Sequence record: PV654397.1
Strand: one strand, 5' to 3'
Length of the DNA: 64,000 bases
Made by a program: the position numbers and the translations under genes
In this document: piece after piece, positions 5,002 through 21,500 of the stretch
How the letters are laid out: each line of letters opens with the position of its first letter
How positions within the stretch are numbered: the first letter of the stretch is position 1
The notes under the pieces: model-generated
Database searches by the model: none
Seen by the model: only the letters and a program-made list of their open reading frames with translations
What the model was told of the DNA's origin: nothing

Positions 5002-5733
5002 ATGATTGATCGTAGAATCCGATTAAGACCTAAAACCGCAGGTGCTAACTATGTGTATGGTGATTTTGGCAACAGTTCAGAACCAACATTGCTATCGTTT
5101 CTGCGTCCAACAAATGGTTTGGTTTGGACTGTAACCCCAACTGTAACTGAACAAAGGTCGGTTCAATATGAAACACAGTCCCCTATACATACTAACAGTA
5201 ACTACAACAACTACAAGAATACAACAAACACAATTTTCACTATCCAAGGTGAGTTTTATGCAAACACTGCTGCTGAAGCAATGTATGCATTGGCTTGTGT
5301 TCATTTTATTCGTTCCGTGTCCTTAATGGACTTTGGTCGTCAAGCAGCATCTGCTAATAATCCCGAACTAGCAATTGCAGGTGCACCACCGCCAATTTTA
5401 CTATTAAGTGGGTATGGTCGTTATACATATAATGATATTCCTGTTATTTTGAAAGCATATAATTTTACATATCCAAATGATGTTTCTTACATTCAGGTTC
5501 CATTGAATAGTAGTGATAGTACTTTTAATTTATCTGATATGGATAGTCGTAAATTCTTCGAACAGCTTAGAAGTACTGGATATATGAATCCACAAGATGA
5601 GGTATGGGTTCCACAGAAAATATCGGTAACACTTCAACTTGAAGAACAACCAACATCTGATTACATGACTAAAAAGTTCAACCTAAATGCATTTAAGCGT
5701 GGTGAACTATTACGTAATGGAGGATTTATCTAA
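5002..5733 (+). CDS. Baseplate tube-fold protein (gp48/gp54/CIS-tube-like)
   Basis: GAPPPILLLSGYG..NDIPVIL..YNFTYP resembles CIS tube proteins; first gene of the baseplate operon; start reassigned to ATG 5002 after GGAG. Confidence 0.5.
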   Translation: MIDRRIRLRPKTAGANYVYGDFGNSSEPTLLSFLRPTNGLVWTVTPTVTEQRSVQYETQSPIHTNSNYNNYKNTTNTIFTIQGEFYANTAAEAMYALACVHFIRSVSLMDFGRQAASANNPELAIAGAPPPILLLSGYGRYTYNDIPVILKAYNFTYPNDVSYIQVPLNSSDSTFNLSDMDSRKFFEQLRSTGYMNPQDEVWVPQKISVTLQLEEQPTSDYMTKKFNLNAFKRGELLRNGGFI

Positions 5734-6047
5734 TGTCCAATTATAGTCAATACTCTCCTTATGCAAAGGTTAAACAAACGTGGTATCTTGGTTACAATTT
5801 ACCACGTGATATGGTTCCTGCTGATACTGACGACTTCTATGTAATTCCATTGAAGTATGAGCATCAACCTTGGCGTTTAGCATACGAAATGTATGGTAAT
5901 GAACGTCTGTATTATGTATTTGCCCTATTGAATCCTGATATATTAGGAGAAGACCCAATATACAATTTTAATAGTGGTATCACAATTCGTGTTCCCTCAA
6001 ATCAACGAGTGCAAAACTATTTGAACGGTACTCGTAACATAGGTTAA
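5733..6047 (+). CDS. LysM-like baseplate wedge protein (gp53/tail X-like)
   Basis: YVIP..Y...PWRLAYEMYGNERLYYVFALLNP..DPIYNF..GITIRVP; stop/start overlap with the previous gene. Confidence 0.7.
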   Translation: MSNYSQYSPYAKVKQTWYLGYNLPRDMVPADTDDFYVIPLKYEHQPWRLAYEMYGNERLYYVFALLNPDILGEDPIYNFNSGITIRVPSNQRVQNYLNGTRNIG

Positions 6048-6058
6048 TGGAGTAAAGT

Positions 6059-8314
6059 ATGGCAGATTTACAAAGTTCTGTTGATAATTTTAAAAATGAT
6101 ATTTCAAACATCACAAGTTCTGCAAAGGCAGCAAAAGAAACTGCAACAAGTACTATTGAAAGCTTAAAAGCAACTGCTAATACTTTGCAAAATGATCTTG
6201 AAAAAGTAAAAAACAATTTTAAAGCTAAGGTTAGTAACGTACAGTCTTTACCAAAGCAAAGTGCAAGCGTTGACCAAGTGTATGAAGACTTGGATCTAAG
6301 TGAGTTTGTTATTCCTTATGACAATAAATTGTTAAAGTATGACAATCCAACTTGGCACTTTTCCCTTTTCGCATTAGACAAGGATGATTTCAAAAACTTC
6401 TGGCTTTACCCAGATGCTGAAGTTCAACGTCATGTCATCTCTGAAAGTGGTGTAACTGGAAAGTATAATATCACAAGTGTTCAGATGACGCAAGCTGGTC
6501 CTTCAACTCCAGGGATGACAACCAACTATTGCTTCAACACAGCAGTACTGAACCTTTCAGAAAACAATAGTATGAGTTTATATGATGAACTAATTTCTTT
6601 AAGTAATAAACTAAGGTATCATAAGTTCATGGACTTACCTTTAATATTAGAATTGAAATTTATTGGATTCAATACTAATGGTGTACCTGAAACTATACCA
6701 GAAACAACTCGTAAATGGTCCGTGAAGATTAACAGTGTTACCGCTAGTGCATCACAAAGTGGTAGTACTATGATGTATTCTATGAGTCTTGTTCATAACC
6801 GCACGGCTCTAGTGGATAACGTTGAATGGACTCTTAAAGAACCATTTAACTGCACAGCAGAAAACTTTGGTGATTTTTGTTTTGATTTGGAAGATAAATT
6901 GAATCAAATGGCAGACCAACAATATGGTTATTTGCGTTATAAATTTGGTGAGTTAGCAGAAGGGAAGTTCTTTGAATTTAAAGTTGCACCAGATTTACAG
7001 GATTTGTTTATAAACTATGATTCTAAACAGATGGCAGAAGCTGGAGCTACAAAAAGTGGTGCACAGGGTTCTAAAAACTTTTCATGGAATCCAAGTACTC
7101 CAATTTCTCGAATTATCGATGACGTAATAGATACCTGTACTGTACAGGCTGATGATAGTACTAGTGTTCGTCAATTTGTTAATATAATCCCACTTAAACA
7201 GTATGTTGGATTTGATAATTACCGAAACACGTCAGTTTATAAAGTTGTTTTCTATATAGTTCGTTTTAAAATTGGTGATATTGTTCATGAATCCGATTTA
7301 CAGCCAGAAAACTTTACATTTGAGTATTTCTTTGAAAATGCCGAGAAATATGTAGACCCAAATGACCAAAAACCAAAGATTAACATGAAAACTTACAATT
7401 ATCAGTTTAGTGGACTCAATAGTGAGATTCTAGACCTTGATTTGAAGTTTGACCAGCAATTCTTTGTGGCTACAACTCGTAACCCTGGACCAATACAGGA
7501 TGTTGCTAACCACGCTGGTACTCATACCTCCCAAGAATTGAATATACAAGGGGTTCAGTACAACAGTATACCAGATGCATGGGCAAAAACAAGTGATTTA
7601 CGCGTTACACGTGATCTTGGTGGTATGTTAACACAGGCCCAGGAACAACTACTCAATCAAGTTGAAACTTTAGCAAAAGAACAAATGCAAGTTGGTAATG
7701 CTGAAGAACAGGATCGTTATAATAACTATCAAGTAAACGTTCTACCACAGTATATTGAAGATTATGTAACCACATATGAAGAAAATGACGGTGGAACCGA
7801 TGGAATTGGTCATCGATATGGTGAAGTGTTCACAATGCCAACTGAAGCAACCAATAATGAAACAACATTATCTGCATCATTGAACGATAACAGTAGTACA
7901 TATGAAATGGACCGCCGTAAAATTCGTGACAACTATTACAATCGTCCATTCTTGTGTAAATTGGATATGCGTGTAGTTGGTGACCCATATTGGTTAGGTT
8001 GGAGTGATTATCCATATATCCAATATCTTGAACAGGTAATTAATGGAGAAGATATGGAAATTAATCCAGAAGATTACCATGTAGCAAACTACATTACATC
8101 TGAAGCATATCTTTTATTGAAATTACAACCTGTAGTTTCTATAAATGATAACACTGGTGTTCTTGATATTAATACCCCAACTACATTTAACCAAACTGTT
8201 TATCGTGTAAACAAAATTGTTCATGATTTTGGTGCAGGTGGTTCATTTACACAACAAATTCAGGCTGCAATTGTAATTCGTGCACTCAAACGTCACGATA
8301 GTATAATTGAATAA
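6059..8314 (+). CDS. Baseplate hub protein (gp27/gpD-like)
   Basis: Lies between LysM and spike genes; C-terminal VVGDPYWLG and YRVNKIVHDFG..GSFTQQI; N-terminal coiled coil. Confidence 0.55.
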   Translation: MADLQSSVDNFKNDISNITSSAKAAKETATSTIESLKATANTLQNDLEKVKNNFKAKVSNVQSLPKQSASVDQVYEDLDLSEFVIPYDNKLLKYDNPTWHFSLFALDKDDFKNFWLYPDAEVQRHVISESGVTGKYNITSVQMTQAGPSTPGMTTNYCFNTAVLNLSENNSMSLYDELISLSNKLRYHKFMDLPLILELKFIGFNTNGVPETIPETTRKWSVKINSVTASASQSGSTMMYSMSLVHNRTALVDNVEWTLKEPFNCTAENFGDFCFDLEDKLNQMADQQYGYLRYKFGELAEGKFFEFKVAPDLQDLFINYDSKQMAEAGATKSGAQGSKNFSWNPSTPISRIIDDVIDTCTVQADDSTSVRQFVNIIPLKQYVGFDNYRNTSVYKVVFYIVRFKIGDIVHESDLQPENFTFEYFFENAEKYVDPNDQKPKINMKTYNYQFSGLNSEILDLDLKFDQQFFVATTRNPGPIQDVANHAGTHTSQELNIQGVQYNSIPDAWAKTSDLRVTRDLGGMLTQAQEQLLNQVETLAKEQMQVGNAEEQDRYNNYQVNVLPQYIEDYVTTYEENDGGTDGIGHRYGEVFTMPTEATNNETTLSASLNDNSSTYEMDRRKIRDNYYNRPFLCKLDMRVVGDPYWLGWSDYPYIQYLEQVINGEDMEINPEDYHVANYITSEAYLLLKLQPVVSINDNTGVLDINTPTTFNQTVYRVNKIVHDFGAGGSFTQQIQAAIVIRALKRHDSIIE

Positions 8315-8327
8315 GGAATAATTTAAG

Positions 8328-10991
8328 ATGGCAGATACAAGTAAGAAATATGCCCAACAACAGTTGGGTCGTTTTGACCCTTCGTATCCACAACTAGCAA
8401 CCGTGATGGATAACCGTGACCCAACTAAATCCGGTAAGCTAAAAGTGTGGATTCAAGGTTCACAAAGTGATAAAAATTCAAAAGAGTCATGGATTGAAGC
8501 ATCATACATGTCTCCATTCGCTGGTAAAACTCCAGGGATACCAAGTGCTGATGCTTATGGTCAATATCCAAAGGGATATGGTTTTTGGGCGGTTCCACCT
8601 GATGTTGGGTGTACCGTTGTTGTTATATTTGCACAAGCAAGAACATTCCAAGCGTATTGGATTGGTTGTGTTTATGACCAACGTATGAATACGATGGTTC
8701 CTGGGATGGCTACTGAAATAAGCAACTATGCTGGTACTGATATGCCATTACCCGTAACTGATTATGACCGTAATACAATTTCTACCAGTACTCAAGACAA
8801 ATATGCAAACGTGCCAATTATTGCAGGTCTGAAAAAACAAAACTTACTTTATGATGAGGAAGCTGGTGTCGCAAACCGTAGTAGTACTCGCCAAACTACC
8901 AGTACTGTTTATGGTCTTTCCTCACCTCGTGGTAACAGTTTTATTATTGATGATGGTTACACAGAAGAAGAATTAACAGCACCTACATGGGATCAAGATC
9001 CAGATGGTTATCAGGATACCCAATTCAATAACCCAGTGAACGATACTCGTGTTGGTTCTCGTAAAAATGAAGGCGTTGTAATTAAAACACGTAGTGGTGC
9101 ACAGTTGTTGTTATCTGAAGCCTCTGGTGATGTTCTTTTAATTAACCGTGATGGTACTGCACGTATTAAATTCACTGGTGAAGGTGATATTGAAATGCAC
9201 TGTGATAAGAATATTAACATTCGTGCAGGTCAAGATATTAACATGGTTGCTGGACGCTCATATAATATTGAAAGTGGAGCAGACTTCAATGCTCGTGTTG
9301 GTGCAAACACTAAACTAGATTTGGTTGGTGCATTGGATGCTAAAGTTGGTGGTCAGGTTGTTATTAACGCTGGAGCAGATTTACGTTTAGTAACAGCAGC
9401 TTCATTACGTATGCAAAGTGGTAGCAGTACTGATATAACTGCTGGTTCTAATGCGTCAATCTCTGCTGCTACCAGTGCTAATCTTATTGGTTCTTCATCA
9501 GCTATTATTAGTGGTGGTGGTCAAACTCTTACTGTTAACAGTGGTGGTAATAGTGGTACTGCTGAATTTAATGCACCAAACTTCCGCACCCCATCTGCTG
9601 GCTTGAATGATCATATACATGATATATCGGCTTGGGTTGATGCTGAGAATCACGGCAGTACTGTTGAACCTCCACGTCAAGGTGGTGGTAATGGGAATAG
9701 TGAATCCCCAGTTCAACCTGAACCTGCTAATGATGTAGCTCCAACTTTAGCTCCAGTACAGGACACTGAAGCAATTCAATATGTAAATTATACAACAGAA
9801 ACAGAACAAGTTCAAACACAAGATTTAATGACTTCTGATCCTGGTATGACTGGTTATAGCATTACGTATGAAGGTCTTCATATGTTCATGCCGTGTAGTG
9901 GAACCATTCGCCAATACGGTTATTGGGGGAAAGGTGTCCCGACTAGTGGTGGTGGTAAAGCTGATAGAAGTGGCTGGGAAATACAGTGCAAGGGTGATGT
10001 TGTAGCTCCAGATGGCGGTGTAGTTGTTATCACTAATGGTGCTTTATTGGTTCAACATAAGTCTGGATATAAATCTGTATTTTATAATATTCAATCAGAT
10101 TTGCTCAATAAAGACGTTGTTCAAAAAGGTCAAGTTATCGGTAAAGCTAATGGTGTTATTCAATTTGAAATAAGAGTAACCTCTGCCAACGTACTAGGAT
10201 TTAGTGGTTCAGTTGACCCTGGATTATTCTACGCATCGCAGACTGGTACAGGTTCTGAAGCGGGAAATAAAACATTAATTGCAGGACAAGCAACGAACCA
10301 AGCAGCACCGAAAGCTGTTGTTCAACCTTCTGTTGATAGTGATGAATTAGTTGTAACAACTAAAATTAAAACTATCGGTACTGGGTATTCTCAACGTGGT
10401 TCTCGTCATGTTCCTCGTCGTAGAAGAACACAACGTTCAGGTGGTACTCCAGCACCTACTGCACAAGAATCATACAATGTGGGTAATGTTGATAAGACTG
10501 CAATTGATTGGAAAGTTGTTCCAGGTGATTCACAATTTATTTCTGAATTGAAAGAATATGAAGGAACAATGGCGTATCAACAAGCTAAAGGATATTACCG
10601 CAATGGTAAATTCTGGAGATATTTGGACAGTCGTGGGTTCCCAACCATCGGATACGGACACTTGATCGTTAATGGGGAAAACTTCTCTGGTGGTATTACT
10701 GAACAGGAAGCCAATGATATGTTGGTTCGTGATAGTAGTAAGGCTATATATGATGCTAAATCAATCTACGCTTCTTATAAGATGAAAACACCTTACATGG
10801 CACAACAAGTTCTATGTCAAATGGTATTCCAGATGGGTAAAGGTGGTGTAATGAAATTTAAGATGATGCTATCTGAAATGGCAAAAGGTAACTACAAGCA
10901 AGCTGCTGCTCAAATTCGAAATTCAGCTTGGTATCGTCAAACTACACGCCGTGCTGAATTAATGGCACGTAGATTAGAGGCATGTCAATAA
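8328..10991 (+). CDS. 5: Central baseplate spike (gp5/VgrG-like): OB fold, beta-helix, HxH apex, degenerate M23-like domain, C-terminal T4-type lysozyme
   Basis: ATVMDNRDPTKSGKLKVWI and GFWAVPPDVG OB fold; beta-helix repeats; NDHIH; lysozyme motifs EYEG, YLDSRGFPTIGYGHL, MVFQMG, WYRQTTRRA. Confidence 0.85.
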   Translation: MADTSKKYAQQQLGRFDPSYPQLATVMDNRDPTKSGKLKVWIQGSQSDKNSKESWIEASYMSPFAGKTPGIPSADAYGQYPKGYGFWAVPPDVGCTVVVIFAQARTFQAYWIGCVYDQRMNTMVPGMATEISNYAGTDMPLPVTDYDRNTISTSTQDKYANVPIIAGLKKQNLLYDEEAGVANRSSTRQTTSTVYGLSSPRGNSFIIDDGYTEEELTAPTWDQDPDGYQDTQFNNPVNDTRVGSRKNEGVVIKTRSGAQLLLSEASGDVLLINRDGTARIKFTGEGDIEMHCDKNINIRAGQDINMVAGRSYNIESGADFNARVGANTKLDLVGALDAKVGGQVVINAGADLRLVTAASLRMQSGSSTDITAGSNASISAATSANLIGSSSAIISGGGQTLTVNSGGNSGTAEFNAPNFRTPSAGLNDHIHDISAWVDAENHGSTVEPPRQGGGNGNSESPVQPEPANDVAPTLAPVQDTEAIQYVNYTTETEQVQTQDLMTSDPGMTGYSITYEGLHMFMPCSGTIRQYGYWGKGVPTSGGGKADRSGWEIQCKGDVVAPDGGVVVITNGALLVQHKSGYKSVFYNIQSDLLNKDVVQKGQVIGKANGVIQFEIRVTSANVLGFSGSVDPGLFYASQTGTGSEAGNKTLIAGQATNQAAPKAVVQPSVDSDELVVTTKIKTIGTGYSQRGSRHVPRRRRTQRSGGTPAPTAQESYNVGNVDKTAIDWKVVPGDSQFISELKEYEGTMAYQQAKGYYRNGKFWRYLDSRGFPTIGYGHLIVNGENFSGGITEQEANDMLVRDSSKAIYDAKSIYASYKMKTPYMAQQVLCQMVFQMGKGGVMKFKMMLSEMAKGNYKQAAAQIRNSAWYRQTTRRAELMARRLEACQ

Positions 10992-11003
10992 ATATTTCAG
11001 TAC

Positions 11004-11011
11004 TATAAATA
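11004..11011 (+). promoter_or_regulatory. Late promoter TATAAATA
   Basis: Exact consensus 17 bp upstream of the lysozyme ATG. Confidence 0.65.
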
Positions 11012-11028
11012 ATAATGAGGAAATCTTT

Positions 11029-11517
11029 ATGAGTAAATGGGAAATCAAAAATACCGACGAACAATTTTTTAAAGAAATTAAAGAATTTGAAGGTACTATT
11101 GCGTATCAGAAAAAACTTGGTTATTTTAAAAATGATAAGTTTTGGGTATATAAAGACAGTCTAGGTCTTGATACCATTGGTTACGGTCACCTTGTACTTA
11201 AGGGTGAAAGTTTCAAAAATGGACTCACTGAAGCAGAAGCTGATGCTCTCCTTATAAAAGATGCTCAGACCGCTTACAATGACGCAAAATCAATCTATGA
11301 TCAATTTGGAATGACTGCTCCAGTACAGGTTCAGCGTGTATTGTGGTTTATGGTGTTCCAAATGGGTAAATCAAAAGTTTTAAATTTCAAAAAAGCGATG
11401 GCTGCTCTCGGTCGTGGTGATTATAAAACTGCTGGTAAAGAAATGCGTGATAGTTCGTGGTACAAACAAACCACATCCAGAGCGGAGAAGATGGCTCGCA
11501 TCGTCGAATCCGTATAA
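11029..11517 (+). CDS. T4-type (GH24) lysozyme, paralog of the spike C-terminal domain
   Basis: EFEG, YKDSLGLDTIGYGHL, MVFQMG, WYKQTTSRA; gap-free alignment to the spike lysozyme domain. Confidence 0.9.
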   Translation: MSKWEIKNTDEQFFKEIKEFEGTIAYQKKLGYFKNDKFWVYKDSLGLDTIGYGHLVLKGESFKNGLTEAEADALLIKDAQTAYNDAKSIYDQFGMTAPVQVQRVLWFMVFQMGKSKVLNFKKAMAALGRGDYKTAGKEMRDSSWYKQTTSRAEKMARIVESV

Positions 11518-11532
11518 TAAAGGAAACATATA

Positions 11533-11928
11533 ATGGCAATTGTTTTTAAAGGTTTTTCAACTCCAGTAGTTGGAAGAACTGAAACATTGTATGACAGTGA
11601 ATTGGTTCGTCAGGATTTAATGAATCATTTCAATACAAAAAAAGGTGAACGTGCATTTGATGCTGATTATGGGTTCATTGCGTGGGATTTGCTATTTGAA
11701 TTGGATGGTTATAATACAATCAACCTTTTGGAAGCAGATGCCCGTAGAATTATTAGCTTGGACCCACGTTTAAACTTAAAGAAACTTCAAATATCAAGAA
11801 TTGAGTACGGTTATCAGATGGATATAGTACTTGAATATGTTGTTCTCAATACTCTTGAAGAATTAACTATAGTTTTTGATGCAAGAAGTAACAACAGAAT
11901 GGCTACCTATTCTGTATCATCTTTGTAA
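11533..11928 (+). CDS. 25: Baseplate wedge protein gp25-like
   Basis: FKGFST, VRQDLMNHFNTKKGERAFDADYG, IISLDPRL: GPW/gp25 family pattern. Confidence 0.85.
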   Translation: MAIVFKGFSTPVVGRTETLYDSELVRQDLMNHFNTKKGERAFDADYGFIAWDLLFELDGYNTINLLEADARRIISLDPRLNLKKLQISRIEYGYQMDIVLEYVVLNTLEELTIVFDARSNNRMATYSVSSL

Positions 11929-11933
11929 ATTAT

Positions 11934-11962
11934 AAAAGCACTCTTCGGGGTGCTTTTCTTTT
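11934..11962 (+). terminator. Intrinsic terminator with C(UUCG)G tetraloop
   Basis: AAAAGCACTC-TTCG-GGGTGCTTTT then TCTTTTT. Confidence 0.85.
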
Positions 11963-12030: not shown

Positions 12031-15000
12031 ATGTCACAACAAAAAAGGCAATCAAATTTATACGCTGGTGAAGATTGGACTCAAGTATATGAAAGCTTTT
12101 ATAAGATCAATCTAACAGCTTATGACTTTGATACAATCCGTCAAAGTATGATTGACTATCTACGTGCTACGTACCCAGATTCTTTCAACGACTGGATCGA
12201 AAACGACCAGTTCATCTTTATTCTAGATACCATTTCTATGCTAGGGCAGAACTTAGCATTCCGTATGGATTTAAACACTCGTGAGAACTTCCTAGATACT
12301 GCTACTCGTCGTGCATCAGTACTGAAACTCGCAAAAATGATTTCTTACTCTCCACGCCGTTCATATCCAGGTCGTGCAGTTGCTAAATTAACAGAAATAA
12401 AAACCAACCAAGACGTTCGTAATAGTTTTAACGAATCACTTAAGGATAAAATCATTCGTTGGAATGACCCAATGGACACAAACTGGTATGAGAACTTCAT
12501 TCTAGTTATGAACAGTTCATTTGTCAGTACTAACCAGTTTGGTAATCCGGTTAAACGTATCGATATCAATGGTGTTTCTCGTCAGCTATATCGTATGAAT
12601 ACAATTCCAATGTCAGCACCAAGTCTTCCATTCACAGCTACAGTTAATGGTGAATCGATGACATTTGAAGTTGTCAACCCTGATATTACAGCAGTTGGTG
12701 TTGAAGAGCGTCACCCTGAACCACAAGAGCAAAAATATATCGTTTATCAGAATGATGGTAACGGATTTAGTTCACCAAATACTGGTTTCTTTGTTTATTT
12801 TGTTCAAGGGACATTGACATACCAAGATTACCAATATAATATTCGTGAAGAAAACCGTATCCAAGACATCAACGTAGATAATATCAACGAAACTGATGTT
12901 TGGGTTCAGGAAATCAACGAAGATGGTATTGTACGTACTAAATGGACCAAAGTTCCATCTATGGAAAGTATCGCATACAATACTGTTAACCGTCAACTAA
13001 AAACAATCTTTGCTGTCACAACTCGTGATAAAGACCAGATTACTATTAAGTATCCTGATTCTCGTAGTGGTGTTGTTCCTCGTGGGACATATCGTGTATG
13101 GTATCGTGTTAGTAATGGTGAAACATACAACATTAAAACGTCTGAAATCCAGAACAAAAGTGTAAAATACACCTATAGAACCAAAACACAATCAAGCTAC
13201 GAATCCAGTACTTTGGATATTCGTTTCACATTGCAATATGAATCAGATCGTGCACAAAGTGCAGAAACAATTGAACAAATTAAGGCTCGTGCTCCACAAA
13301 TGTATTACACTCAAAACCGTTTTGTTAACGGCGAAGACTATAACATTGCTCCGTTGAGTTTGGGTAACACAGTTCTTAAATCTAAAGCAATTAACCGTTT
13401 ATATAGTGGACAGTCACGATTCATTGATATTAATGATCCAACTGGTAAGTATCAAAACACTGATGTGTTTAGTGATGATGGTTCAATGTATCAAGAAAAC
13501 ACACAATTTAATAAATCTTTACAATTACCAACTACCAAAACAAATGCTAGTATTGTAATTGATAATATTCAGCCATTGATTGGTGAGAATGCTGTAATCC
13601 AACGTTATCAAGCATATCCACCGAATACAATTGGTATTGAAATTCAACAAAAATGGACACCTGAATACAATTCTAATTACGCAACTAATACGTATGGTCG
13701 TATTATGGGGGCAACAGGTAACGTATTCGGAAATTATCAAGTTGGTACGTTGATTAAGTTTTCAAATGCCGGAACTACTGTGTGGGCTAGTATTGTTAGT
13801 GTTCTTGATAATGGATATTACGTTCTAAGTACTTCAGTTTCATCAAATATGCAAGCACAAGAGTACATTTTACAATACAGAACACGTTTTAATAGTGTCG
13901 AAGTGCAAGCAATCGCTGCAATGCTTGATAAAAAGACAGATTTTGTTATTATTCATGATAAAGAAACAACTTCTTGGATTCCATTAGAAATCAGTACTGA
14001 TGAAGATACTATTTCTTATAATGGAAATGAAGTTCTTGTTATGATTAACATCAAATATACTGCTGAAACATGGGAATTTGATGCGAATGGCGTTGAATAT
14101 GTGTTCGTTGGTGGTGATAAAGTTCGTTTTTACTTCGTTTCTTCTAAAAAGATAACTGATATTAGTACTGGTAGTGTTCAAAGTGACAAAATTGAAATTT
14201 TATCATCAAATACCACAAGCAATAGTAATGCTGGGTTGACAAGTAACATAGATTTCCAAATTTATGACACAATTCAACAAGAAAACGGGTATCTTGATGG
14301 TTCTCGTGTGGTTATCACCTCTGAAAACGTTGATAGTAATGGAATCCCACTAGAACCTAATCAATTCAGAGAAATTGTACCAAATTGGACTGGTGAAGAT
14401 TCAGTTAAATATGGTGGTATATTGGTTTTCCAAGAAAACGATGATTTCACTATATCAGTACTGTCATTACCGAACGATACTTTCACTATTCTTGATTCTT
14501 CATGGGCTTATACAATGGATCAGGCACTTGCAGAAACTAATGCGTATAAGAGAAGTGAATTTGTTCGCAACAATGCTATTCGCTCAACAACATTGAGTGG
14601 TATCTATAGTAAAGGTTCAGGCTTTATGGTTGGCTTTAAATACGATGGTAAATATTACTTCATAGAACAAACTGTTGGTAATAATAATGGCCGTTTAAAC
14701 CAATTAATTGAGAACTTGACCTATTCTGATGATACAACTGCTGCAACTCCTGAACTTGCGTTTTATCGTGCTATTGTTAATATCGGTACTAATGCTGATG
14801 CTAACCAAAAGTTAGATTATTATGGTTATAAAGATGTAACTTCACAATATACCGTAAAAACGAATGCAAGAACTGGTATTGACTTCCACTGGAAACATTA
14901 TGCACCAGATGATAATCGCATTGACCCAAGTAGAACAAACTTGATTGACATGTATGTATTAACCAATTCATACAAAACTGAAGTTGATGTATGGTTGAAG

Positions 15001-15492
15001 AATGGAACACAAGGTAATATGCCTAAACCACCAACATCTGTCGAATTGAAAGACATTTTTAAAGAAGTTGAACAAAAAATAGTCATCAGTGACAGTATTA
15101 TTTGGCATAGTGCAGAATATCTACCATTATTTGGTGCGAGTGCTGCTGAAGATTATAAAGCAGATTTCAAAGTCGTCAAATTGCCTAACAGTACAATGAG
15201 TGATGATGAAATTCGTCAAAATGTCGTAGCACTAACTAACGAGTATTTTAATGTTGACAACTGGGATTTTGGTGAAAGTTTCTATTACACAGACTTGTGT
15301 ACATACATTCACTCCCAATTAGGACGACATATTAGTACTATTGTTATCGTAGCTCAAAACCCTAACTCTAAATTTGGCTCACTATTTGAAATCCCTTCAC
15401 GTTCTGACCAGATTTTCTTAAGTACTGCATCAGTTGATAACGTACAGATAGTCAATTCCTTGGCTAAGAGTAACATTAACATTGGTTCATAA
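12031..15492 (+). CDS. 6: Baseplate wedge protein gp6-like (enlarged)
   Basis: LTAYDFDTIRQSMIDYLR, ENFLDTATRRASVLKLAKMISYSP, ETIEQIKARAP..YYTQNRFVNGEDY. Confidence 0.85.
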   Translation: MSQQKRQSNLYAGEDWTQVYESFYKINLTAYDFDTIRQSMIDYLRATYPDSFNDWIENDQFIFILDTISMLGQNLAFRMDLNTRENFLDTATRRASVLKLAKMISYSPRRSYPGRAVAKLTEIKTNQDVRNSFNESLKDKIIRWNDPMDTNWYENFILVMNSSFVSTNQFGNPVKRIDINGVSRQLYRMNTIPMSAPSLPFTATVNGESMTFEVVNPDITAVGVEERHPEPQEQKYIVYQNDGNGFSSPNTGFFVYFVQGTLTYQDYQYNIREENRIQDINVDNINETDVWVQEINEDGIVRTKWTKVPSMESIAYNTVNRQLKTIFAVTTRDKDQITIKYPDSRSGVVPRGTYRVWYRVSNGETYNIKTSEIQNKSVKYTYRTKTQSSYESSTLDIRFTLQYESDRAQSAETIEQIKARAPQMYYTQNRFVNGEDYNIAPLSLGNTVLKSKAINRLYSGQSRFIDINDPTGKYQNTDVFSDDGSMYQENTQFNKSLQLPTTKTNASIVIDNIQPLIGENAVIQRYQAYPPNTIGIEIQQKWTPEYNSNYATNTYGRIMGATGNVFGNYQVGTLIKFSNAGTTVWASIVSVLDNGYYVLSTSVSSNMQAQEYILQYRTRFNSVEVQAIAAMLDKKTDFVIIHDKETTSWIPLEISTDEDTISYNGNEVLVMINIKYTAETWEFDANGVEYVFVGGDKVRFYFVSSKKITDISTGSVQSDKIEILSSNTTSNSNAGLTSNIDFQIYDTIQQENGYLDGSRVVITSENVDSNGIPLEPNQFREIVPNWTGEDSVKYGGILVFQENDDFTISVLSLPNDTFTILDSSWAYTMDQALAETNAYKRSEFVRNNAIRSTTLSGIYSKGSGFMVGFKYDGKYYFIEQTVGNNNGRLNQLIENLTYSDDTTAATPELAFYRAIVNIGTNADANQKLDYYGYKDVTSQYTVKTNARTGIDFHWKHYAPDDNRIDPSRTNLIDMYVLTNSYKTEVDVWLKNGTQGNMPKPPTSVELKDIFKEVEQKIVISDSIIWHSAEYLPLFGASAAEDYKADFKVVKLPNSTMSDDEIRQNVVALTNEYFNVDNWDFGESFYYTDLCTYIHSQLGRHISTIVIVAQNPNSKFGSLFEIPSRSDQIFLSTASVDNVQIVNSLAKSNINIGS

Positions 15493-15536: not shown

Positions 15537-15572
15537 AATCAAATGAATGAACGAATTATATGGAGTCCAAAA

Positions 15573-18500
15573 ATGACTAATAATTTTAAGTTTCAACCTA
15601 CACAGATGGCTGAAGCAGTACAGAAGAAGCTTTTCATAAAAAGATTGCCTGAGTGGATGCAAGGCTTAGAAGATATTCAGAAAGTCAGTGATGATGTTAT
15701 CCAACAATGGTTTAATCCGGCTGAAAACGAATTAGTTGACGGCTACATTGGTGACATGGGTTCTCCGGCAGCAGCAGGGAACATCTTCTTACACGAGTCA
15801 ACAGTCGCACGTCAACTATATCAGTTGTCCTCTGCGTATGTCTCAAGAAATGATGACTCCAGCATTCGTTCAATTCAATTTTATGATGATCTAGTTGGTT
15901 ATATGAATCATTACGGTGCACTAACCGAAAATGAAAGCCGTTTGTTTAATGGTAAGTTCTATTCATGGACCCCACCAATTAACCCAAATAAAATGAACAA
16001 CTACAGTTCATACCTATGGGATTCCAAGAATAGCTATAATATCACAACTCCAGATTATATTGTAATGGAACGTGGTGCAGAAAATGGTAACACTTGGTCA
16101 CTACAAAACTTCTGGTACACATTAGGTGAAACTTTAGAAGATGGTACAATCCTAACTGAAGAACTAATGCAAGATTCCCGTTTTGTTCGTGCTCGTGCTC
16201 CAATTATCGAATACAATAAAAATATCGAACTAATGAACTACGGTACTAAATTCCGTGGGACAGTTGATTTGTTCTCTGATATTATTAAACCAGAAGATAT
16301 CGTACAAAAAGATATTAACAGCGGTATACGTATTGATGGTATTATTCCACAAGATGGTATGCGTATTCTTTTCACCAGTATTGGTAACAATGGTGAAAAC
16401 AACCGAATTTATAAAGTATATGTTAAACGTATGCAAGATGGAACACGTGTGTATGGTCTAGCATTAGATCCAGACGAAGAATCTGAAAGCCGTCCGAGTG
16501 GTGAACCACAAGATGGTGACGTAGTTCTTATTATCAAAGGTAATGAATTTGGTAACAGTTCCATGTATTGGGACGGTTCTCATTGGATTCAAGCACAGTC
16601 TAAAACTTCTGTGAACGTATTTCCACAATTCCAATTGTATGACCGTAATGGTGTTAAACTAAACAACACTACTACCTATCCATCAAGTACTTTTACTGGT
16701 TCTTCACTATTTGGTTTTAAAATTAACTATAATTATGCAACTGATAGCGTTTATGGTTATAACATTGAACTAGGTGATTACAATTATTACACATATGAGA
16801 ATTTCCTACAATCAACTCGTTATACTTACGAGCATTTGGGTGTGGAAGTTGAAATTGATGGACTATATTACTATAACGTAATTGGTGAAGGTAATACAAT
16901 GAACCTAGAAACTGATTGGGTTCGTAGTACTGAATACTCCAAACAATATGTTAAACAAACTCCACAGGTTGAACGTACAGTAATGTTCCGCGTGTTCAGT
17001 ACTGTTTATGACATGGAAAGTTTCAAATATCCAGTTGAAGGAATGTATGCTTATGTAATTGAAGTTGATAGAACATATCAATATTACAAAGCAGAACGTG
17101 AAACATATCTTGATTGGCATGTTATCGTTGGTGATGGGGTACAAAGCGTTAAGTACAATCATACATTTGAATTGGCACAAAAAGTACTAGATAATTCTGA
17201 TGATATTATCGAACTAGTTGTTGATGGTGTGGAAATAAAAGAATACACCAAAACTGTAGTTAATAATCAAGTACAAAGTATTACAATTGATAGCTCTGTT
17301 GATTTGGATGAAGATTCTGTTGTACAAATCAGAACTTATAGTAGCACTATCACTCCTAATAAAGAGTTGGGTGCATATGAAGTTCCAATTAACCTACAAA
17401 ATAACCCATATAATTCAAACATTGAATACATCAACCAAGGTGATTACACCCTACACTTCCAAGATATTATTCAAAAGAATATTACATCTGGTTCTGCTGA
17501 TGACTTTAACAATTACGAAGAACGTTTGGCTGCTGGTTTGGTTAATAATGGTGTAGGCACTAAAATTATTCAAAACGAAGCGTCCATGTTACCACTAATG
17601 GCACATACCGCTAATGAAGATATTGATTTGTTTGAATCAATCATGTTTATGCAAGCAGAATACTTCCGCTTCATTAACAAGTTCAACACTCAAATGCTTC
17701 GTTTGTATGAAGAAGACCCAAGTGCTTTTCTTGGTAATAGTGCATCAAACATCGTAGATGCGATTCTAACAGCTATTAATATGGGACGTGATAGTACATT
17801 CCCATTCTACTATGACAACGTTGCAAGCACTGCTGGGTTTATTCGTGCATTTGTCCCACCAACTCCACAGTTCTTGGGTATTTTGCAAGCTTATACACCA
17901 CAAAAAGCAACATTCTTAACTGCTGGTAGTAAATCTAGCTGGTATAATATCAGTCATACTGGTATTATTTCAAAAGCATACCGTGTTATCAATGGTGTTG
18001 ATAAAATGGATGACGTTGTTTTCGAATTGGAGAATCGTATCTTTAATAGTATTGACCTTACTTTCAAGGATATTGATTATAAACCAGTACTAAACAGTGA
18101 AGACCTATTCCCAACTCCATATTTCACTGGTACTGATTATAGTGCAGAAGAAAAGAAAACTCTATTACTACGTGGTTACATTAACTTCACAGCAACCAAT
18201 GGTATTAGTAACAGTACTCATGATTATGATGCAAATAACTGGAGAACTTGGAACTATACTGGTAGTTATTATGTTGTTGATGGTCAACGTACTGAAATTC
18301 CTGCTCGTGGCTCATGGCGTGCAATCTATACTGACCAATATGGCACATATCGTCCAGCAACCCATCCGTGGGAAATGATGGGCTTCTCTCAACGTCCTAC
18401 TTGGTGGAACCAAGAATACGAACCAACCGCAGTTCAAGTTGGTGAACGTGAGGGTGATGTTGTTTATGTGTATGAAGCACTAGTAATGAATGAAAGTGGT

Positions 18501-21500
18501 GATTTGGTCCCAAGTGGTTTGTGGGATATTGATGGTACTATCGGTGACAGCAGCACTGGTACTATTTTGTCCGGTGAACGCCGTGGTCAATATGACAAAT
18601 ACAAGCGTTTCGGTGTACAGCCATTTAAAATCACTAAGACTGGCGAGAAAACCAGTACTGGTATTGATATTTGTGAAGTTGAATATATTGCACCTGAAGT
18701 TTTAGGTCTTGTTAGTGGTAATTTAGATCATCGTGCAGAACCGTGGGCTTATGGTGATATGGGTGACATGGAATTCACTTACATGAACACTGCGATGTTT
18801 GCTTATGACCAAATGCTTCTTCTATACAAAGCAAAACCAGCACAGTTTGCAAACTATTACTGGGATACCCGTAATGATAACCTTAAACCAGTTTATACTG
18901 ATGGTTCACAGTTCCTTTATGGTGAAACTCGTAAGCGTCTAAACTTTGACAGTACTACATTAGTACATGGTGAGAAAAATACCCGTACTATCGGTTATCA
19001 AATGTTTGTTAGTGACTATTTGATGTATCAGAATAAGAACATTACCACCAAATACGGTGACGTTGTTCGTTCTTCTTATGTTAATGTCGCTCACAAAATT
19101 GGTGGCTTTACTAAAGCAGACCAATTGACATTCACTGCTAAATCTTTCGGTTTGATTTCACAAGAAAACCAAACTATCGGTCTAGTTCGTTCCAATAACA
19201 TTCGCGATGAGCAAATGAGTGCAGTAAAAATTACTTGGAATGGTAGTGCATATCAAATTGATGGTTATGATTTAGTTGGTGCTAAATTTAAGTATAAAAT
19301 TCCAGTTAAAAATGGAAGAAAAGTAACTCTTAAATTGGAAGACAGAACTGTTGTTCATTACAATGAATGGAAATCTGAAGGTACATTAGAATATGGTAAA
19401 ATATTCAATACATACCAAGAAGTTTATACTTTCATTTGTGGATATGGTGAATATCTAAAAGAACATGGCTGGATTTTTGAAGATGTAAATGATAGTGGTG
19501 CTCAACAAGACTGGACAACTATTGCTAAAGACTTTGTTATTTGGAGTCAGAATAATTTAAGTACTGGTGAGTTCATCTCCTGTACTCCAAGTGCAGCTAA
19601 TGCTAAATTTGGTGCAGATTTTGGTTCAGTTCAATCTGTTACACAGAACAGTGGTGGTGTTTGGTCACTACTCGATGATGAAAACCAAGGTATCCGTCAA
19701 TATGAAATCGAAACTTCGCGTATCGGTAACGTATTCACAGTGAGAACTACATCTGAATCACAAAAACGTATGGCGTTGATTCGTTTGAGCCTAAGTTCAT
19801 ATGAACACGCAGTTGTTTTTGATGATAAAACTATCTTTGGTGATTACATTTACCAACCAACTTATGGTGCTATTCAAGAATTGATTAAAATGTATGGTTA
19901 CATTACTGGGTCATGGACTGGTCGCCTACAAGCACCTGGTTTCATTATCCTAGAAGCAGGAACTTTACCATCATTTGAAAAATTAGTAACTGATTTTGAA
20001 TTATATTATAATAGTGAAACTCCTGTTAGTGATGTTCAGCTTCAAGAGTTATCAAATCACTTGATTGGCTATCAAACTCGTGATTATCTACAACGTATGA
20101 TTAGTAGTGATGTTAGTCGTGTTGATTTCTATAAAGGATTCATTCATGACAAAGGTACTAACCAAGTAATGGAAAAAGTACTACGCGTTTCTAAATCTTA
20201 CGACACTGATGAATATAAAGCACTACAGGAATGGGCATTTAAGATTGGTACTTATGGTAATATCAATGGTAAGAAAAATCTACAATTTAAACTAATCAAT
20301 GACCAATTTAAACAACAACCACAGATGGTTTCATTTGATGTTAATGCTACATCAAATGGTACTGGTAATGGTATTGTTTATTACGGTGAACAAGGGGTTG
20401 ACTCACGCTGGATTACTCGTCCAAATGGTAAGTTTTCATTCCCAATGCGTAGTGGAAGAAGTGAGAATATCCAACTTCCAGACATTGGTCCTGTAACACT
20501 AGATGAAATTTCATACGTTACTAAAGATTTCAGTACTGCATATAATGATCGTATCAATTATATGAATAACAGTGGTGAAATACCAGATTCTGTATGGATG
20601 TTTAAAGATGGTAATGATTTGTGGAATATTTTCGAACTAGTAGACACTGAAGTTGAGATGCTCTCTATCGTTCCAATTGAAAATACCGATGTATATGCAG
20701 AACAATTCTGTAAAGTAACTCTAAGTGATGATATCCCACTAAATGATGGTGATTATTATTACTTTGTTGATGAAACTAACTTTATGCCAGATACATTGAC
20801 TATAGAAAGTCAATATTATACTGCGGGTAATGACCCTAGAGTTATGGTAGTTCCGTTTGACACTTCAATCACTATTGACTTCACTGATCCTGATACTCGC
20901 CCACGCTTGTATCGTTATGTTTCACGATTCAGTACTGAAGAGATGCGTCAGGAATACATTGACAGAAAATATAGTTTTAAAGCTCCACAAAGTACTTTGT
21001 TTGACCGCCCAACCACATATGATGAGCGTACTAACATTACTGCGTTGTACCTAAACGTGTTTGACCCAATCAACGGTGTTATTCCTGGTGCAGCGATGCA
21101 GAACGTTACCTACACATCTCCAGTTGACCCAGCACAATACAACAGCAATGGTGAATTGATTCAAGCATGGGGTGCTGATAAAGTTGGTCAGGTTTGGTGG
21201 AACACCAGCACTGCTTTCTACTTAGATTACACTCGTGCAATCTATGATGCTGATGGTAATGTGGATGTTGATGCAACAAATGAATATAAACGTTATAACT
21301 GGGGCAGATTGCTACCGCACAGTACTGTTGATGTTCTTGAATGGGTATGTTCACCAGTTGAACCATATAACTGGGACAAATACTGCAAAGACGTTGCTAA
21401 CAAAAATAAAAACAACACTATGTACCTACCAAGCGGAACCGCATTGGAAGATAATTATAGTACGTTCTTAGAATATGATAGCACAACTGATACTTATGTT

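What the first reader, a model, noticed from the sequence alone, without database searches (positions are those of the whole stretch)
8328..10991. Spike built like an evolved VgrG: apex followed by a catalytically dead M23/LytM domain and a terminal lysozyme
T4 gp5 carries its lysozyme before the beta-helix. Here the order is OB fold, beta-helix, NDHIH apex (about 9606-9620), linker, M23-like domain (about 9880-10235), basic linker (PRRRRT), lysozyme (about 10500-10991). In the M23-like part the zinc motifs are replaced: HxxxD reads RSGWE, YxH reads FYN, HxH reads VIQFEIR. Degenerate LytM domains such as EnvC and NlpD activate host amidases, so this domain could bind peptidoglycan or recruit host hydrolases during penetration.
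Basis: partly seen in the sequence, partly recalled or inferred. Interest (0 to 1): 0.7.

Follow-up and report, generated by a model that had tools for sequence, protein, structure and literature searches.

The report
Phage tail spike with dead peptidase
This gene is the tail spike of a giant E. coli phage; after its needle come a wall-cutting lysozyme and a peptidase-shaped domain that has lost every catalytic residue, a layout already partly noted in print but whose "dead" domain is still unexplained.

Summary
ORF 8328-10991 (+, 887 aa) is the baseplate central spike of an Asteriusvirus (Rak2-like) jumbo coliphage, 100% identical in DNA to phage WPEC5.

- OB fold
- beta-helix
- invariant HxH motif (NDHIH)
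- conserved linker
- LytM/M23-fold domain
- conserved basic linker
- GH24 lysozyme

**The M23-like domain.** It folds with confidence as LytM; the structure matches DipM, EnvC, SpoIIQ and lysostaphin. All five zinc and catalytic positions are replaced, in this protein and in all 86 full-length relatives. The domain is nevertheless under strong purifying selection. The lysozyme in the same chain keeps its catalytic Glu and Asp in 86 of 87 proteins.

- "Apex" rests on the HxH motif alone, and 456 residues follow it.
- "Evolved VgrG" is an analogy, because there is no gp27 module.
- Amidase activation is untested, and the domain shows no special kinship to EnvC.

**What is known and what is new.** The gene family and its weak M23 hit were published in 2017 (phage CBB). 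The family-wide loss of catalytic residues appears not to have been reported. Positional orthologues in other phages carry an active M23, a GH19 domain, or nothing at the same C-terminal position, so the spike swaps its C-terminal cargo.

Verdict: real, and a variant of a known kind.

The parts
8328..10991 (+). [quoted passage not shown]
   Evidence: Intact ORF. phrog_13211 matches over 887/887 positions. 100% nt identity to Escherichia phage WPEC5 and 83.5% to PBECO4 gp534. Orthologues were found in virions by mass spectrometry: phAPEC6 gp241 (PMC7247149) and CBB_240 (PMC5259590).
8394..8675 (+). OB-fold domain (aa 23-116)
   Evidence: Pfam PF04717, E 7.9e-7. phmmer hits the VgrG OB region of 9jg8. 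The AF2 model has pLDDT about 90 here, and Foldseek returns CIS/VgrG/gp5/pyocin/P2 spikes.
8688..9077 (+). Highly conserved middle region (aa 121-250) between OB fold and beta-helix; T4 gp5 has its lysozyme at this position, this protein does not
   Evidence: Column conservation 0.53-0.88 (10-residue blocks, mostly 0.8-0.9) across 87 proteins. No lysozyme signal here. It is part of the Foldseek alignment to the AlgoCIS spike 7aef_q.
9078..9572 (+). Beta-helix (aa ~251-415)
   Evidence: Pfam DUF2345. phmmer and profile hits to VgrG beta-helices 4uhv, 9gtr, 4mtk. Model pLDDT 88-94 up to aa ~370.
9573..9662 (+). Histidine-cage region with the NDHIH motif (9606-9620); putative apex
   Evidence: H429 and H431 are invariant in 87/87; H442 is present in 81/87. 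The profile aligns the HxH with the C-terminal HxH of solved tail-tip protein gp86, 9zd7_P, E 0.0066. The fold itself is untested (pLDDT 50-66).
9663..9860 (+). Linker 1 (aa 446-511): Pro/Gln/Glu-rich but partly conserved (aa 481-500)
   Evidence: Conservation 0.43-0.68, with D499 in 85/87. Low pLDDT as a monomer. dN/dS 0.15 against PBECO4.
9861..10289 (+). Degenerate LytM (M23-fold) domain, aa 512-654; R547, E551, N587, V610, Q612 stand where M23 enzymes have H, D, H, H, H
   Evidence: No member of the 87-protein family has the full catalytic set. W550, G580 and R616 are invariant. dN/dS is 0.028. In 1.84 billion representative proteins this domain type occurs only in 870-984 aa spikes.
10290..10502 (+).
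   Evidence: V675 and G691 are invariant; S692 85/87; P696 86/87. pLDDT 43-60 as a monomer.
10503..10991 (+). GH24 T4-type lysozyme domain (aa 726-887), catalytic residues kept
   Evidence: Pfam PF00959, E 1.3e-10. The best solved relatives are gp5 lysozyme domains 7cn7 and 6xc0, E 2e-11. E745 86/87, D767 86/87, T773 61 T/19 D/4 S.
11029..11517 (+). Free 162-aa lysozyme, tandem paralogue of the spike's C-terminal domain
   Evidence: 50% identity over 159 aa, E 1e-62. The phage UE-S1 162-aa lysozyme LysUE1, taken here to be its orthologue, was purified and is lytic (PMC12805682). The CBB counterpart was not confirmed as a virion protein (PMC5259590). It is absent between spike and gp25 in the distant locus L003.
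6059..8314 (+). 751-aa virion protein always encoded just upstream of the spike (candidate hub partner; function not shown)
   Evidence: phrog_11190. No Pfam or PDB hit. A full-length homologue lies upstream of the spike in L002 (E 2e-11). Proteins in the same position occur in L004 and L005.
5733..6047 (+). gp53-like baseplate wedge subunit
   Evidence: phrog_7145, E 3e-44; Pfam Phage_gp53, weak.
11533..11928 (+). gp25-like baseplate wedge subunit, followed by a terminator-like hairpin at 11934-11957
   Evidence: Pfam GPW_gp25, E 1.5e-8. Hairpin.
12031..15492 (+). Large baseplate wedge subunit (1153 aa)
   Evidence: phrog_10646. PBECO4 annotation.

Best explanation
The gene encodes the central spike of the contractile tail of a Rak2-like (Asteriusvirus) jumbo coliphage.

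Shown:
- An OB fold and a VgrG/gp5-type beta-helix end in an invariant HxH histidine motif.
- The same chain then continues for 456 residues as a C-terminal cargo. The cargo is a LytM-fold domain that has lost all five zinc and catalytic residues, followed by a GH24 lysozyme that keeps its catalytic residues.

Inferred mechanism:
- On sheath contraction the spike is pushed through the outer membrane into the periplasm, as shown for the P2 spike, taking three copies of the cargo with it.
- The lysozyme cuts glycan strands locally so that the tube can pass the cell wall.
- The dead LytM domain does not cut. Most likely it keeps the peptide-stem binding groove of its enzymatic ancestors and holds or positions the lysozyme on peptidoglycan. 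The conserved flanking linkers tie it to the needle and to the lysozyme.

Inferred evolution: positional orthologues of this spike carry an active M23 domain, a GH19 domain or no cargo at all. The C-terminus of this spike is therefore a cargo slot. In this lineage the M23 domain probably stopped being an enzyme once a lysozyme was present downstream.
For: - Spike identity and baseplate context.
- LytM fold: AF2 pLDDT above 94; Foldseek matches DipM, EnvC (TM 0.67 on the target), SpoIIQ, lysostaphin and LytM; profile hits to solved M23 proteins; Pfam M23 in 26/28 members.
- Loss of catalysis: residue-by-residue pairing with an intact M23 spike; no intact set in 87 proteins; a 7-9 residue deletion in the loop before the former HxH.
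- Constraint on the dead domain: invariant fold residues and dN/dS 0.028, against 0.054 for the lysozyme and 0.11-0.15 for the linkers.
- Lysozyme competent: E745 and D767 in 86/87; the UE-S1 counterpart (LysUE1) of its free paralogue is lytic (PMC12805682).
- Virion protein: PMC7247149, PMC5259590, PMC5852040.
- Spike reaches the periplasm in P2: PMC12407873.
- Cargo slot: syntenic loci with an active M23 (L002), GH19 (L004) or a short spike (L005).
- Precedent for inactive wall-hydrolase folds kept as presumed binding modules, and for spikes with C-terminal enzymatic domains: phage 812 (PMC13433997).
Against: - No binding or activity data exist for this domain.
- The positions that replaced the active site are only moderately conserved (551: I/E/T/V/S; 587: D/G/N; 612: many residues). 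That does not argue for one fixed ligand at that exact spot.
- The groove-forming loop is shortened.
- How 3 x 456 residues of cargo are arranged around or beyond a histidine-cage tip is unknown. Bulk at the tip lowered infectivity about two-fold in P2 (10.1101/2023.02.25.529910).
- It is not known whether the chain is processed, as T4 gp5 is.
- Common descent of this domain from the active M23 of P0108 is inferred from position. Their sequence similarity is weak (hhalign E 1.5e-6).
Confidence: 0.55

Rival explanations
1. Structural or regulatory module. The dead LytM domain does not bind peptidoglycan. Instead it docks the cargo against the beta-helix or the inner baseplate, or covers the lysozyme's active site so that the enzyme stays silent in the virion and is released only after penetration. 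T4 gp5 lysozyme is controlled in a comparable way inside the gp5-gp27 complex.
For: - Both linkers flanking the domain are conserved yet model poorly as a monomer, as expected for segments that fold only in the trimer or against a partner.
- The domain type is found nowhere outside this spike family, which fits a role tied to this particular assembly.
- The ex-active-site positions vary.
Against: - Nothing shows a contact with the helix or with the lysozyme; only monomer models could be made.
- Other degenerate LytM domains with a known role (EnvC, DipM, SpoIIQ) bind partner proteins through the old groove and are not mere packing pieces.
Confidence: 0.25
2. Host-amidase activator. Once in the periplasm, the dead LytM domain mimics EnvC/NlpD and switches on host AmiA/B/C, so that host enzymes help open the cell wall.
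For: - The fold matches degenerate LytM regulators among the top hits: DipM ranks 2-3, EnvC rank 4, and the AmiB-EnvC complex 8c0j rank 13.
- All zinc ligands are lost, as in EnvC/NlpD.
- Delivery to the periplasm is plausible (PMC12407873).
Against: - There is no specific kinship. The family profile scores EnvC at E 0.079, but the active enzyme LasA at 1e-6 and zoocin A at 1.5e-4. Foldseek E-values for active and degenerate LytM domains are alike.
- No coiled-coil, LysM or lipoprotein module of the known activators is present.
- Residues at the former active site differ between relatives.
- Only three copies arrive per virion, and the chain already carries its own wall hydrolase.
Confidence: 0.1
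3. The cargo is removed. The part after the HxH tip acts during assembly only (folding or registration of the trimer) and is cleaved off, so the mature spike ends in a sharp apex.
For: - Canonical apex spikes have HxH near the C-terminus (10.1101/2023.02.25.529910).
- Linker 1 follows the HxH directly.
- The conserved R-G-S...P-R-R motif in linker 2 could be a processing site.
- T4 gp5 is known to be cleaved during assembly (established knowledge of gp5).
Against: - The lysozyme keeps its catalytic residues in 86/87 relatives and the dead domain is under strong purifying selection. That is hard to explain for a discarded piece.
- Virion mass spectrometry finds the protein, although the papers do not give peptide positions (PMC7247149, PMC5259590).
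- Short relatives that also have HxH still carry about 90 residues after it.
Confidence: 0.07
4. The M23-like domain is still an enzyme and uses a non-canonical site.
For: H577, E614 and R616 are nearly invariant. A few relatives have His at position 547.
Against: - H577, E614 and R616 correspond to fold residues that ordinary M23 domains also keep (alignments).
- All metal ligands and both catalytic histidines are missing in every one of 87 proteins.
- The loop that carries the HxH is shortened.
Confidence: 0.03

Closest known systems
[quoted passage not shown]
   Same: Same protein family, with 50-93% identity and the same length and domain order. The proteins are virion-associated. The CBB paper lists OB fold, a possible central M23 domain (E 6e-4) and a C-terminal lysozyme (PMC5259590).
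   Different: None of these papers notes that the M23 domain lacks every catalytic residue, that an invariant HxH precedes the cargo, or that the linkers are conserved. XacN1 ORF322, which is probably (not verified) the orthologue, is simply called an M23 peptidase (PMC5852040).
T4 gp5 cell-puncturing device (tail lysozyme)
   Same: OB fold, GH24 lysozyme and triple beta-helix in one chain. Among solved structures, the lysozyme domain is closest to gp5 lysozyme domains (7cn7 and 6xc0, E 2e-11).
   Different: In gp5 the lysozyme sits between the OB fold and the helix, and the helix end is capped by a separate tip protein, gp5.4. Here the lysozyme is the last domain, an HxH motif ends the helix, and a dead LytM domain is added.
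P2 gpV / phi92 spike / R-pyocin spike (apex-type spikes with an Fe-binding HxH cage)
   Same: OB fold, beta-helix, then HxH. Foldseek finds 4s37 and 3qr8. The HxH aligns with that of solved tail-tip protein gp86.
   Different: In those proteins the HxH lies about 12-15 residues from the C-terminus and forms the very tip. Here 456 residues follow it.
Evolved VgrG proteins of type VI secretion (for example the Vibrio cholerae VgrG with a C-terminal peptidoglycan hydrolase; named from my own knowledge)
   Same: A needle with an enzymatic cargo appended after the beta-helix. The OB fold and helix are homologous.
   Different: No gp27-like N-terminal module. The gene lies in a phage baseplate operon, not a T6SS cluster. 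The cargo includes a non-catalytic domain.
Degenerate LytM regulators: EnvC, NlpD, DipM, SpoIIQ
   Same: LytM fold without a full set of zinc ligands. They are the top structural matches.
   Different: No specific sequence kinship. None of their accessory modules is present. The domain is carried on a virion spike. Degeneration probably arose independently.
Staphylococcus phage 812 central spike and weld protein (PMC13433997)
   Same: A central spike that continues beyond the needle part into binding and enzymatic domains. Its baseplate also holds a wall-hydrolase fold (CHAP 'clip' domain) that lacks catalytic residues and is thought to keep binding peptidoglycan.
   Different: A phage of a Gram-positive host, with different folds (coiled coil, TNF-like knob, phosphodiesterase petal). 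The inactive domain is on another protein.
phi29 gp13 tail-tip protein (lysozyme plus M23 endopeptidase; named from my own knowledge, it did not come back as a hit)
   Same: A tail-borne pair of a muramidase and an M23-fold domain in one chain.
   Different: The order is reversed, the M23 domain is active there, and the protein is not a contractile-tail spike.

Membership tests
Central spike of contractile tails (gp5 / gpV / C-terminal half of VgrG) | N-terminal OB fold (Phage_base_V) | tested here: met
   PF04717, 29.8 bits against a cut-off of 23.8. Foldseek returns spike proteins, best E 1.9e-8.
Central spike of contractile tails (gp5 / gpV / C-terminal half of VgrG) | Beta-helical needle after the OB fold | tested here: met
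   DUF2345, 30.9 bits against a cut-off of 30.7. VgrG helix hits. The trimeric state itself could not be modelled.
Central spike of contractile tails (gp5 / gpV / C-terminal half of VgrG) | Encoded among baseplate genes and present in virions | tested here: met
   Neighbours are gp53-like, gp25-like and wedge genes. Virion mass spectrometry of orthologues in PMC7247149 and PMC5259590.
Apex-type spike (P2 gpV kind) | HxH motif at the end of the beta-helix | tested here: met
   H429 and H431 in 87/87. The motif aligns with the HxH of 9zd7 gp86, E 0.0066.
Apex-type spike (P2 gpV kind) | HxH lies close to the C-terminus, so that the cage forms the tip | tested here: not met
   456 residues follow the motif.
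Apex-type spike (P2 gpV kind) | Conical apex fold with a buried Fe ion | not testable with these tools
   The monomer model has pLDDT 50-66 over aa 380-450. No trimer or metal modelling was available.
T4 gp5-type tail lysozyme | GH24 domain with catalytic Glu/Asp/Thr | tested here: met
   PF00959, E 1.3e-10. E745, D767 and T773 are conserved.
T4 gp5-type tail lysozyme | Lysozyme inserted between the OB fold and the beta-helix | tested here: not met
   The lysozyme is aa 726-887, after the helix.
T4 gp5-type tail lysozyme | Maturation cleavage of the chain | not testable with these tools
   The published virion mass spectrometry gives no peptide positions.
VgrG (evolved) | gp27-like module fused N-terminally | tested here: not met
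   The protein starts at the OB fold and aligns to VgrG residues 364 onwards.
VgrG (evolved) | Effector domain appended after the beta-helix | tested here: met
   LytM-fold plus lysozyme occupy aa 512-887. This is a likeness in design, not in family.
Peptidase M23 (active enzymes) | LytM fold | tested here: met
Peptidase M23 (active enzymes) | HxxxD and HxH zinc and catalytic residues, plus the third-motif His | tested here: not met
   R547, E551, N587, V610 and Q612 occupy those positions. No intact set occurs in 87 relatives.
Degenerate LytM amidase activators (EnvC / NlpD / ActS) | LytM fold lacking zinc ligands | tested here: met
Degenerate LytM amidase activators (EnvC / NlpD / ActS) | Specific sequence relationship to these proteins | tested here: not met
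   EnvC scores E 0.079-0.1, weaker than the active M23 enzymes LasA, pseudoalterin and zoocin A.
Degenerate LytM amidase activators (EnvC / NlpD / ActS) | Accessory modules (coiled coil, LysM, lipoprotein signal) | tested here: not met
   No such Pfam hits were found.
Degenerate LytM amidase activators (EnvC / NlpD / ActS) | Binds and activates cell-wall amidases | not testable with these tools
   No complex modelling or assay was available.

The most novel reading that the evidence does not exclude
The dead LytM domain is a phage-delivered mimic of the bacterial divisome activators EnvC/NlpD. Injected into the periplasm on the spike, it would switch on the host's own amidases at the entry site, so that the phage opens the cell wall partly with host enzymes.
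Probability: 0.1. Interest if true: 0.8.

Novelty: new variant of a known kind. Interest (0 to 1): 0.45.

Why it matters
How large myophages pass the cell wall is known in detail only for T4. This spike shows a different solution. The wall-cutting enzyme is the last domain of the needle protein, and it travels with a peptidase-shaped domain that has been kept for a very long time without being a peptidase.

Knowing what that domain binds would show whether phages reuse dead cell-wall enzymes as targeting or regulatory parts, as bacteria do with EnvC, NlpD and DipM.

Related phages carry an active M23, a GH19 or nothing at the same C-terminal position. Phage central spikes therefore exchange C-terminal cargo much as evolved VgrGs do. 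This is useful for annotating the many "baseplate hub / lysozyme / M23 peptidase" genes in jumbo-phage genomes, some of which are at present mislabelled as active peptidases.

Tried and rejected
- **phmmer of aa 500-680 against PDB:** found nothing. Only a family profile reached M23 structures.
- **BLASTP and local hhalign to the intact-M23 spike P0108:** aligned only the C-terminal half of the domain. A global hhalign was needed to place the HxxxD position.
- **hmmalign of 147 library hits:** confirmed H/D at columns 547/551 and H at 587 in ordinary M23 proteins. The HxH columns mostly fell in insertions, so that part of the mapping rests.
- **Apex test:** the monomer AF2 model is unreliable at aa 380-450. 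The phi92 spike came back only at E 0.94, and P2 gpV only by fold at E 6.7e-3.
- **His-tag artefact:** the best 'HxH' alignment, to VgrG1 4uhv, runs into that construct's His-tag and was discarded.
- **Upstream 751-aa protein:** no Pfam or PDB hit, so its role as hub is only positional.
- **Promoter scan:** not above chance. No tRNAs in the window.
- **Literature:** searches found no solved Rak2-like baseplate and no paper on degenerate LytM domains in phage spikes. Supplementary files gave no peptide positions.
- **Consensus lines:** those that the alignment tools printed by themselves were not used.
Full report
**What the window is.** The region matches Escherichia phage WPEC5 at 100% and 35 other Asteriusvirus jumbo phages of Escherichia and Salmonella at 80-99.8%. 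[quoted passage not shown]

The gene order in the window is:
- gp53-like wedge subunit (5733-6047)
- a 751-aa virion protein (6059-8314)
- the 887-aa ORF of the finding (8328-10991)
- a free 162-aa lysozyme (11029-11517)
- gp25-like subunit (11533-11928), followed by a terminator-like hairpin
- a 1153-aa wedge subunit
- a 3333-aa virion protein

Orthologues were detected in virions of phAPEC6 (gp241, 95.9 kDa; PMC7247149) and CBB (CBB_240; PMC5259590). XacN1 ORF322, which lies next to a baseplate wedge gene and is probably the orthologue (not verified), was also found in virions (PMC5852040).

**Check of the observation.** The ORF is intact and every motif lies at the stated coordinates. Pfam gives the OB fold (aa 23-116), beta-helix repeats (DUF2345), a sub-threshold M23 hit (aa 550-607, E 0.003) and the GH24 lysozyme (aa 765-882). 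The N-terminal 450 residues model at mean pLDDT 80. Foldseek returns only central spikes of contractile systems: AlgoCIS 7aef_q at 1.9e-8, VgrGs, T4 gp5, P1, phiKZ, the R2-pyocin spike, Mu and P2 gpV.

**The M23-like domain is real.**
- I collected 86 full-length relatives (35-99% identity, 869-984 aa) from Escherichia, Cronobacter, Erwinia, Yersinia and Xanthomonas phages and from metagenomes.
- With them as the alignment, residues 440-735 were modelled. The core, aa 514-654, has pLDDT above 94.
- Foldseek found 53 PDB matches at E<=0.001. Every one of the 50 listed is a LytM/M23-fold protein: PrgK, DipM, EnvC (TM 0.67 normalised to the target), SpoIIQ, lysostaphin, LytM, LasA, Csd1-3 and ShyA.
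- A profile of 28 family segments hits solved M23 proteins by sequence: LasA 1.1e-6, SpoIIQ 2.5e-6, DipM 5e-5.
- 26 of the 28 segments hit Pfam M23 individually, best E 5.7e-11.

**The domain is dead.** A related spike, P0108, carries a bona fide M23 domain (Pfam E 4.7e-28) with HxxxD, a third-motif His and HxH. A global profile alignment pairs window R547, E551, N587, V610 and Q612 with its H499, D503, H553, H584 and H586. Local alignments agree for the last three positions. In ordinary M23 proteins from a 1.84-billion-protein library, the columns of 547/551 hold H/D and the column of 587 holds H.

None of the 87 family proteins has the full set. Position 547 is R in 71 and H in 5. Position 551 is I in 50. 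Position 587 is D, G or N. Positions 610 and 612 are never both His. The loop before the former HxH is 7-9 residues shorter than in active enzymes.

**Yet the domain is kept.**
- W550, G580, R616 and the following G..G..DPG.F segment are invariant.
- Against PBECO4 the domain has dN/dS 0.028. The lysozyme has 0.054, the helix 0.08 and the linkers 0.11-0.15. dS is saturated, so these values are rough.
- The lysozyme in the same chain keeps E745 and D767 in 86/87 and T773 in 61/87. This is a useful internal control.
- This LytM type occurs only in this spike family. In the representative library there are seven clusters at E<1e-30, all 870-984 aa, and then a gap to generic M23 proteins at E>=5e-16.

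**The 'apex'.** H429 and H431 are invariant in 87/87. Most relatives have a further His at 433, and H442 is present in 81/87. The literature states that HxH near the C-terminus identifies an Fe-binding apex. It also states that the same cage occurs at internal positions of fibres (10.1101/2023.02.25.529910; PMC12407873).

A profile of aa 340-452 aligns the motif, in register after the helix, with the C-terminal HxH of solved tail-tip protein gp86 (9zd7, E 0.0066). The phi92 spike scores only 0.94. An alignment to VgrG1 4uhv ends in that construct's His-tag and is an artefact. The model is unreliable in this region.

The supported statement is therefore 'a histidine-cage motif ends the helix'. 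Whether it forms the physical tip while three 456-residue chains continue from it is open. Short relatives with the same motif also have about 90 residues after it.

**Linkers.** Both 'linkers' are more conserved than expected for spacers. In aa 481-500, D499 is present in 85/87. In aa 671-698, V675 and G691 are invariant, S692 is 85/87 and P696 is 86/87. They model poorly as monomers, which suggests that they fold against a partner or in the trimer. That last point is an inference.

**Related loci.** The synteny gp53-like -> large protein -> spike -> gp25 -> wedge -> giant protein is kept in distant metagenomic phages. The large upstream protein is homologous over its full length (E 2e-11). 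At the same position the spike takes several forms:
- short, about 500-580 aa
- ending in an active M23 domain and no lysozyme (P0108, L002)
- ending in a GH19 domain (P0101, L004)
- carrying 350-680 residues of unknown cargo (P0087, P0100, P0104, P0106, P0107, P0113)

After the helix these spikes have either HxH or a 'PTHEP'-type motif, and cargo follows either one. The C-terminus of this spike is therefore a cargo slot.

The free lysozyme downstream is 50% identical to the spike's last domain. LysUE1, a 162-aa lysozyme of the Asteriusvirus UE-S1 that I take to be its orthologue, is lytic in vitro (PMC12805682). The free gene is missing between spike and gp25 in the most distant family member (L003), so it is a later tandem copy or was lost there.

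**Mechanism.**
- Shown: the domain composition, the loss of the M23 catalytic residues, the retention of the lysozyme catalytic residues, purifying selection, baseplate context, and virion presence of orthologues.
- Inferred from established knowledge of contractile tails and from the P2 result that the spike ends up in the periplasm (PMC12407873): contraction carries three copies of the cargo into the periplasm, where the lysozyme opens the glycan strands.
- Inferred for the dead LytM domain: the most economical role is a non-catalytic peptidoglycan or peptide-stem binding or positioning module. A comparable role is proposed for the inactive CHAP 'clip' domain of the phage 812 baseplate (PMC13433997).
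- Rivals: a docking or lysozyme-silencing role, activation of host amidases, removal after assembly, and residual catalysis.
- On amidase activation specifically: it has no support beyond the shared property of being a dead LytM domain. EnvC is a weaker sequence match than active enzymes, no accessory modules are present, and the former active-site positions vary between relatives.

**Comparison with what is known, and novelty.** The family and its three Pfam domains, including a weak central M23 hit, were described for CBB_240 and its Rak2-like homologues in 2017 (PMC5259590), and XacN1 ORF322 is called an M23 peptidase (PMC5852040). I found no paper stating that the domain is degenerate, that an invariant HxH precedes the cargo, or that orthologous spikes swap cargo. 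No Rak2-like baseplate structure turned up; the phAPEC6 tail map is at about 25 Å. I therefore rate this as a new variant of a known kind and of moderate interest. The topological puzzle of a tip motif followed by bulky cargo, and the unexplained conservation of a dead enzyme, are the parts worth following.

Noticed in passing
window 11029-11517 (+): A free 162-aa GH24 lysozyme lies directly downstream of the spike. It is 50% identical to the spike's last domain and has its own GAGG ribosome-binding site 37 bp after the spike's stop. The pair is a tandem duplication. The free copy is absent between spike and gp25 in the distant relative L003.
   Followed up: partly
window 10395-10421 (aa 690-698): A conserved motif R-G-S-x-x-x-P-R-R sits in the linker between the dead LytM domain and the lysozyme (G691 invariant, S692 85/87, P696 86/87). 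It could be a processing or binding site. No known match.
   Followed up: partly
P0088, P0089, P0090, P0092, P0093, P0098, P0101 (aa 476), P0103, P0108 (aa 411), P0109, P0110, P0112: Distant orthologous spikes that lack the aligned HxH carry a conserved 'P-T-H/T-E-P' motif after the beta-helix, often followed by H-E-N. When cargo is present it comes after this motif. This may be a second, undescribed kind of spike end.
   Followed up: partly
window 6059-8314 (+); L002 3715-5994; L004 1500-4988; L005 2429-5008: A large virion protein (751-1162 aa) always precedes the spike gene and has no Pfam or PDB match. By position it could be the hub partner (the gp27 role), but nothing shows this.
   Followed up: partly
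window 11934-11957 (+): A 10-bp-stem terminator-like hairpin with a T-run follows the gp25-like gene. It suggests that 5733-11928 is one late transcription unit.
   Followed up: no
window 15543-25544 (+); L004 11253 onwards: A giant virion protein gene (3333 aa here, 4615 aa in the distant locus L004) follows the wedge gene in conserved synteny.
   Followed up: no
P0005, P0006, P0007 (family members, 70-75% identical): These three relatives have His at the position of R547 together with Glu at 551 (an 'HxxxE'), but lack the other three catalytic residues. This is either an intermediate or a partial reversal.
   Followed up: no
P0119-P0125 (hits): The best non-family matches of the dead-LytM profile are long proteins with 3-5 tandem M23-like stretches. 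Several of these stretches are themselves degenerate, for example three repeats with N/S/M at the catalytic columns in P0125.
   Followed up: no
PDB 4uhv_A: The apparent alignment of the window's HxH to the C-terminus of VgrG1 is to the expression construct's His-tag. This is a trap for anyone who repeats the search.
   Followed up: yes
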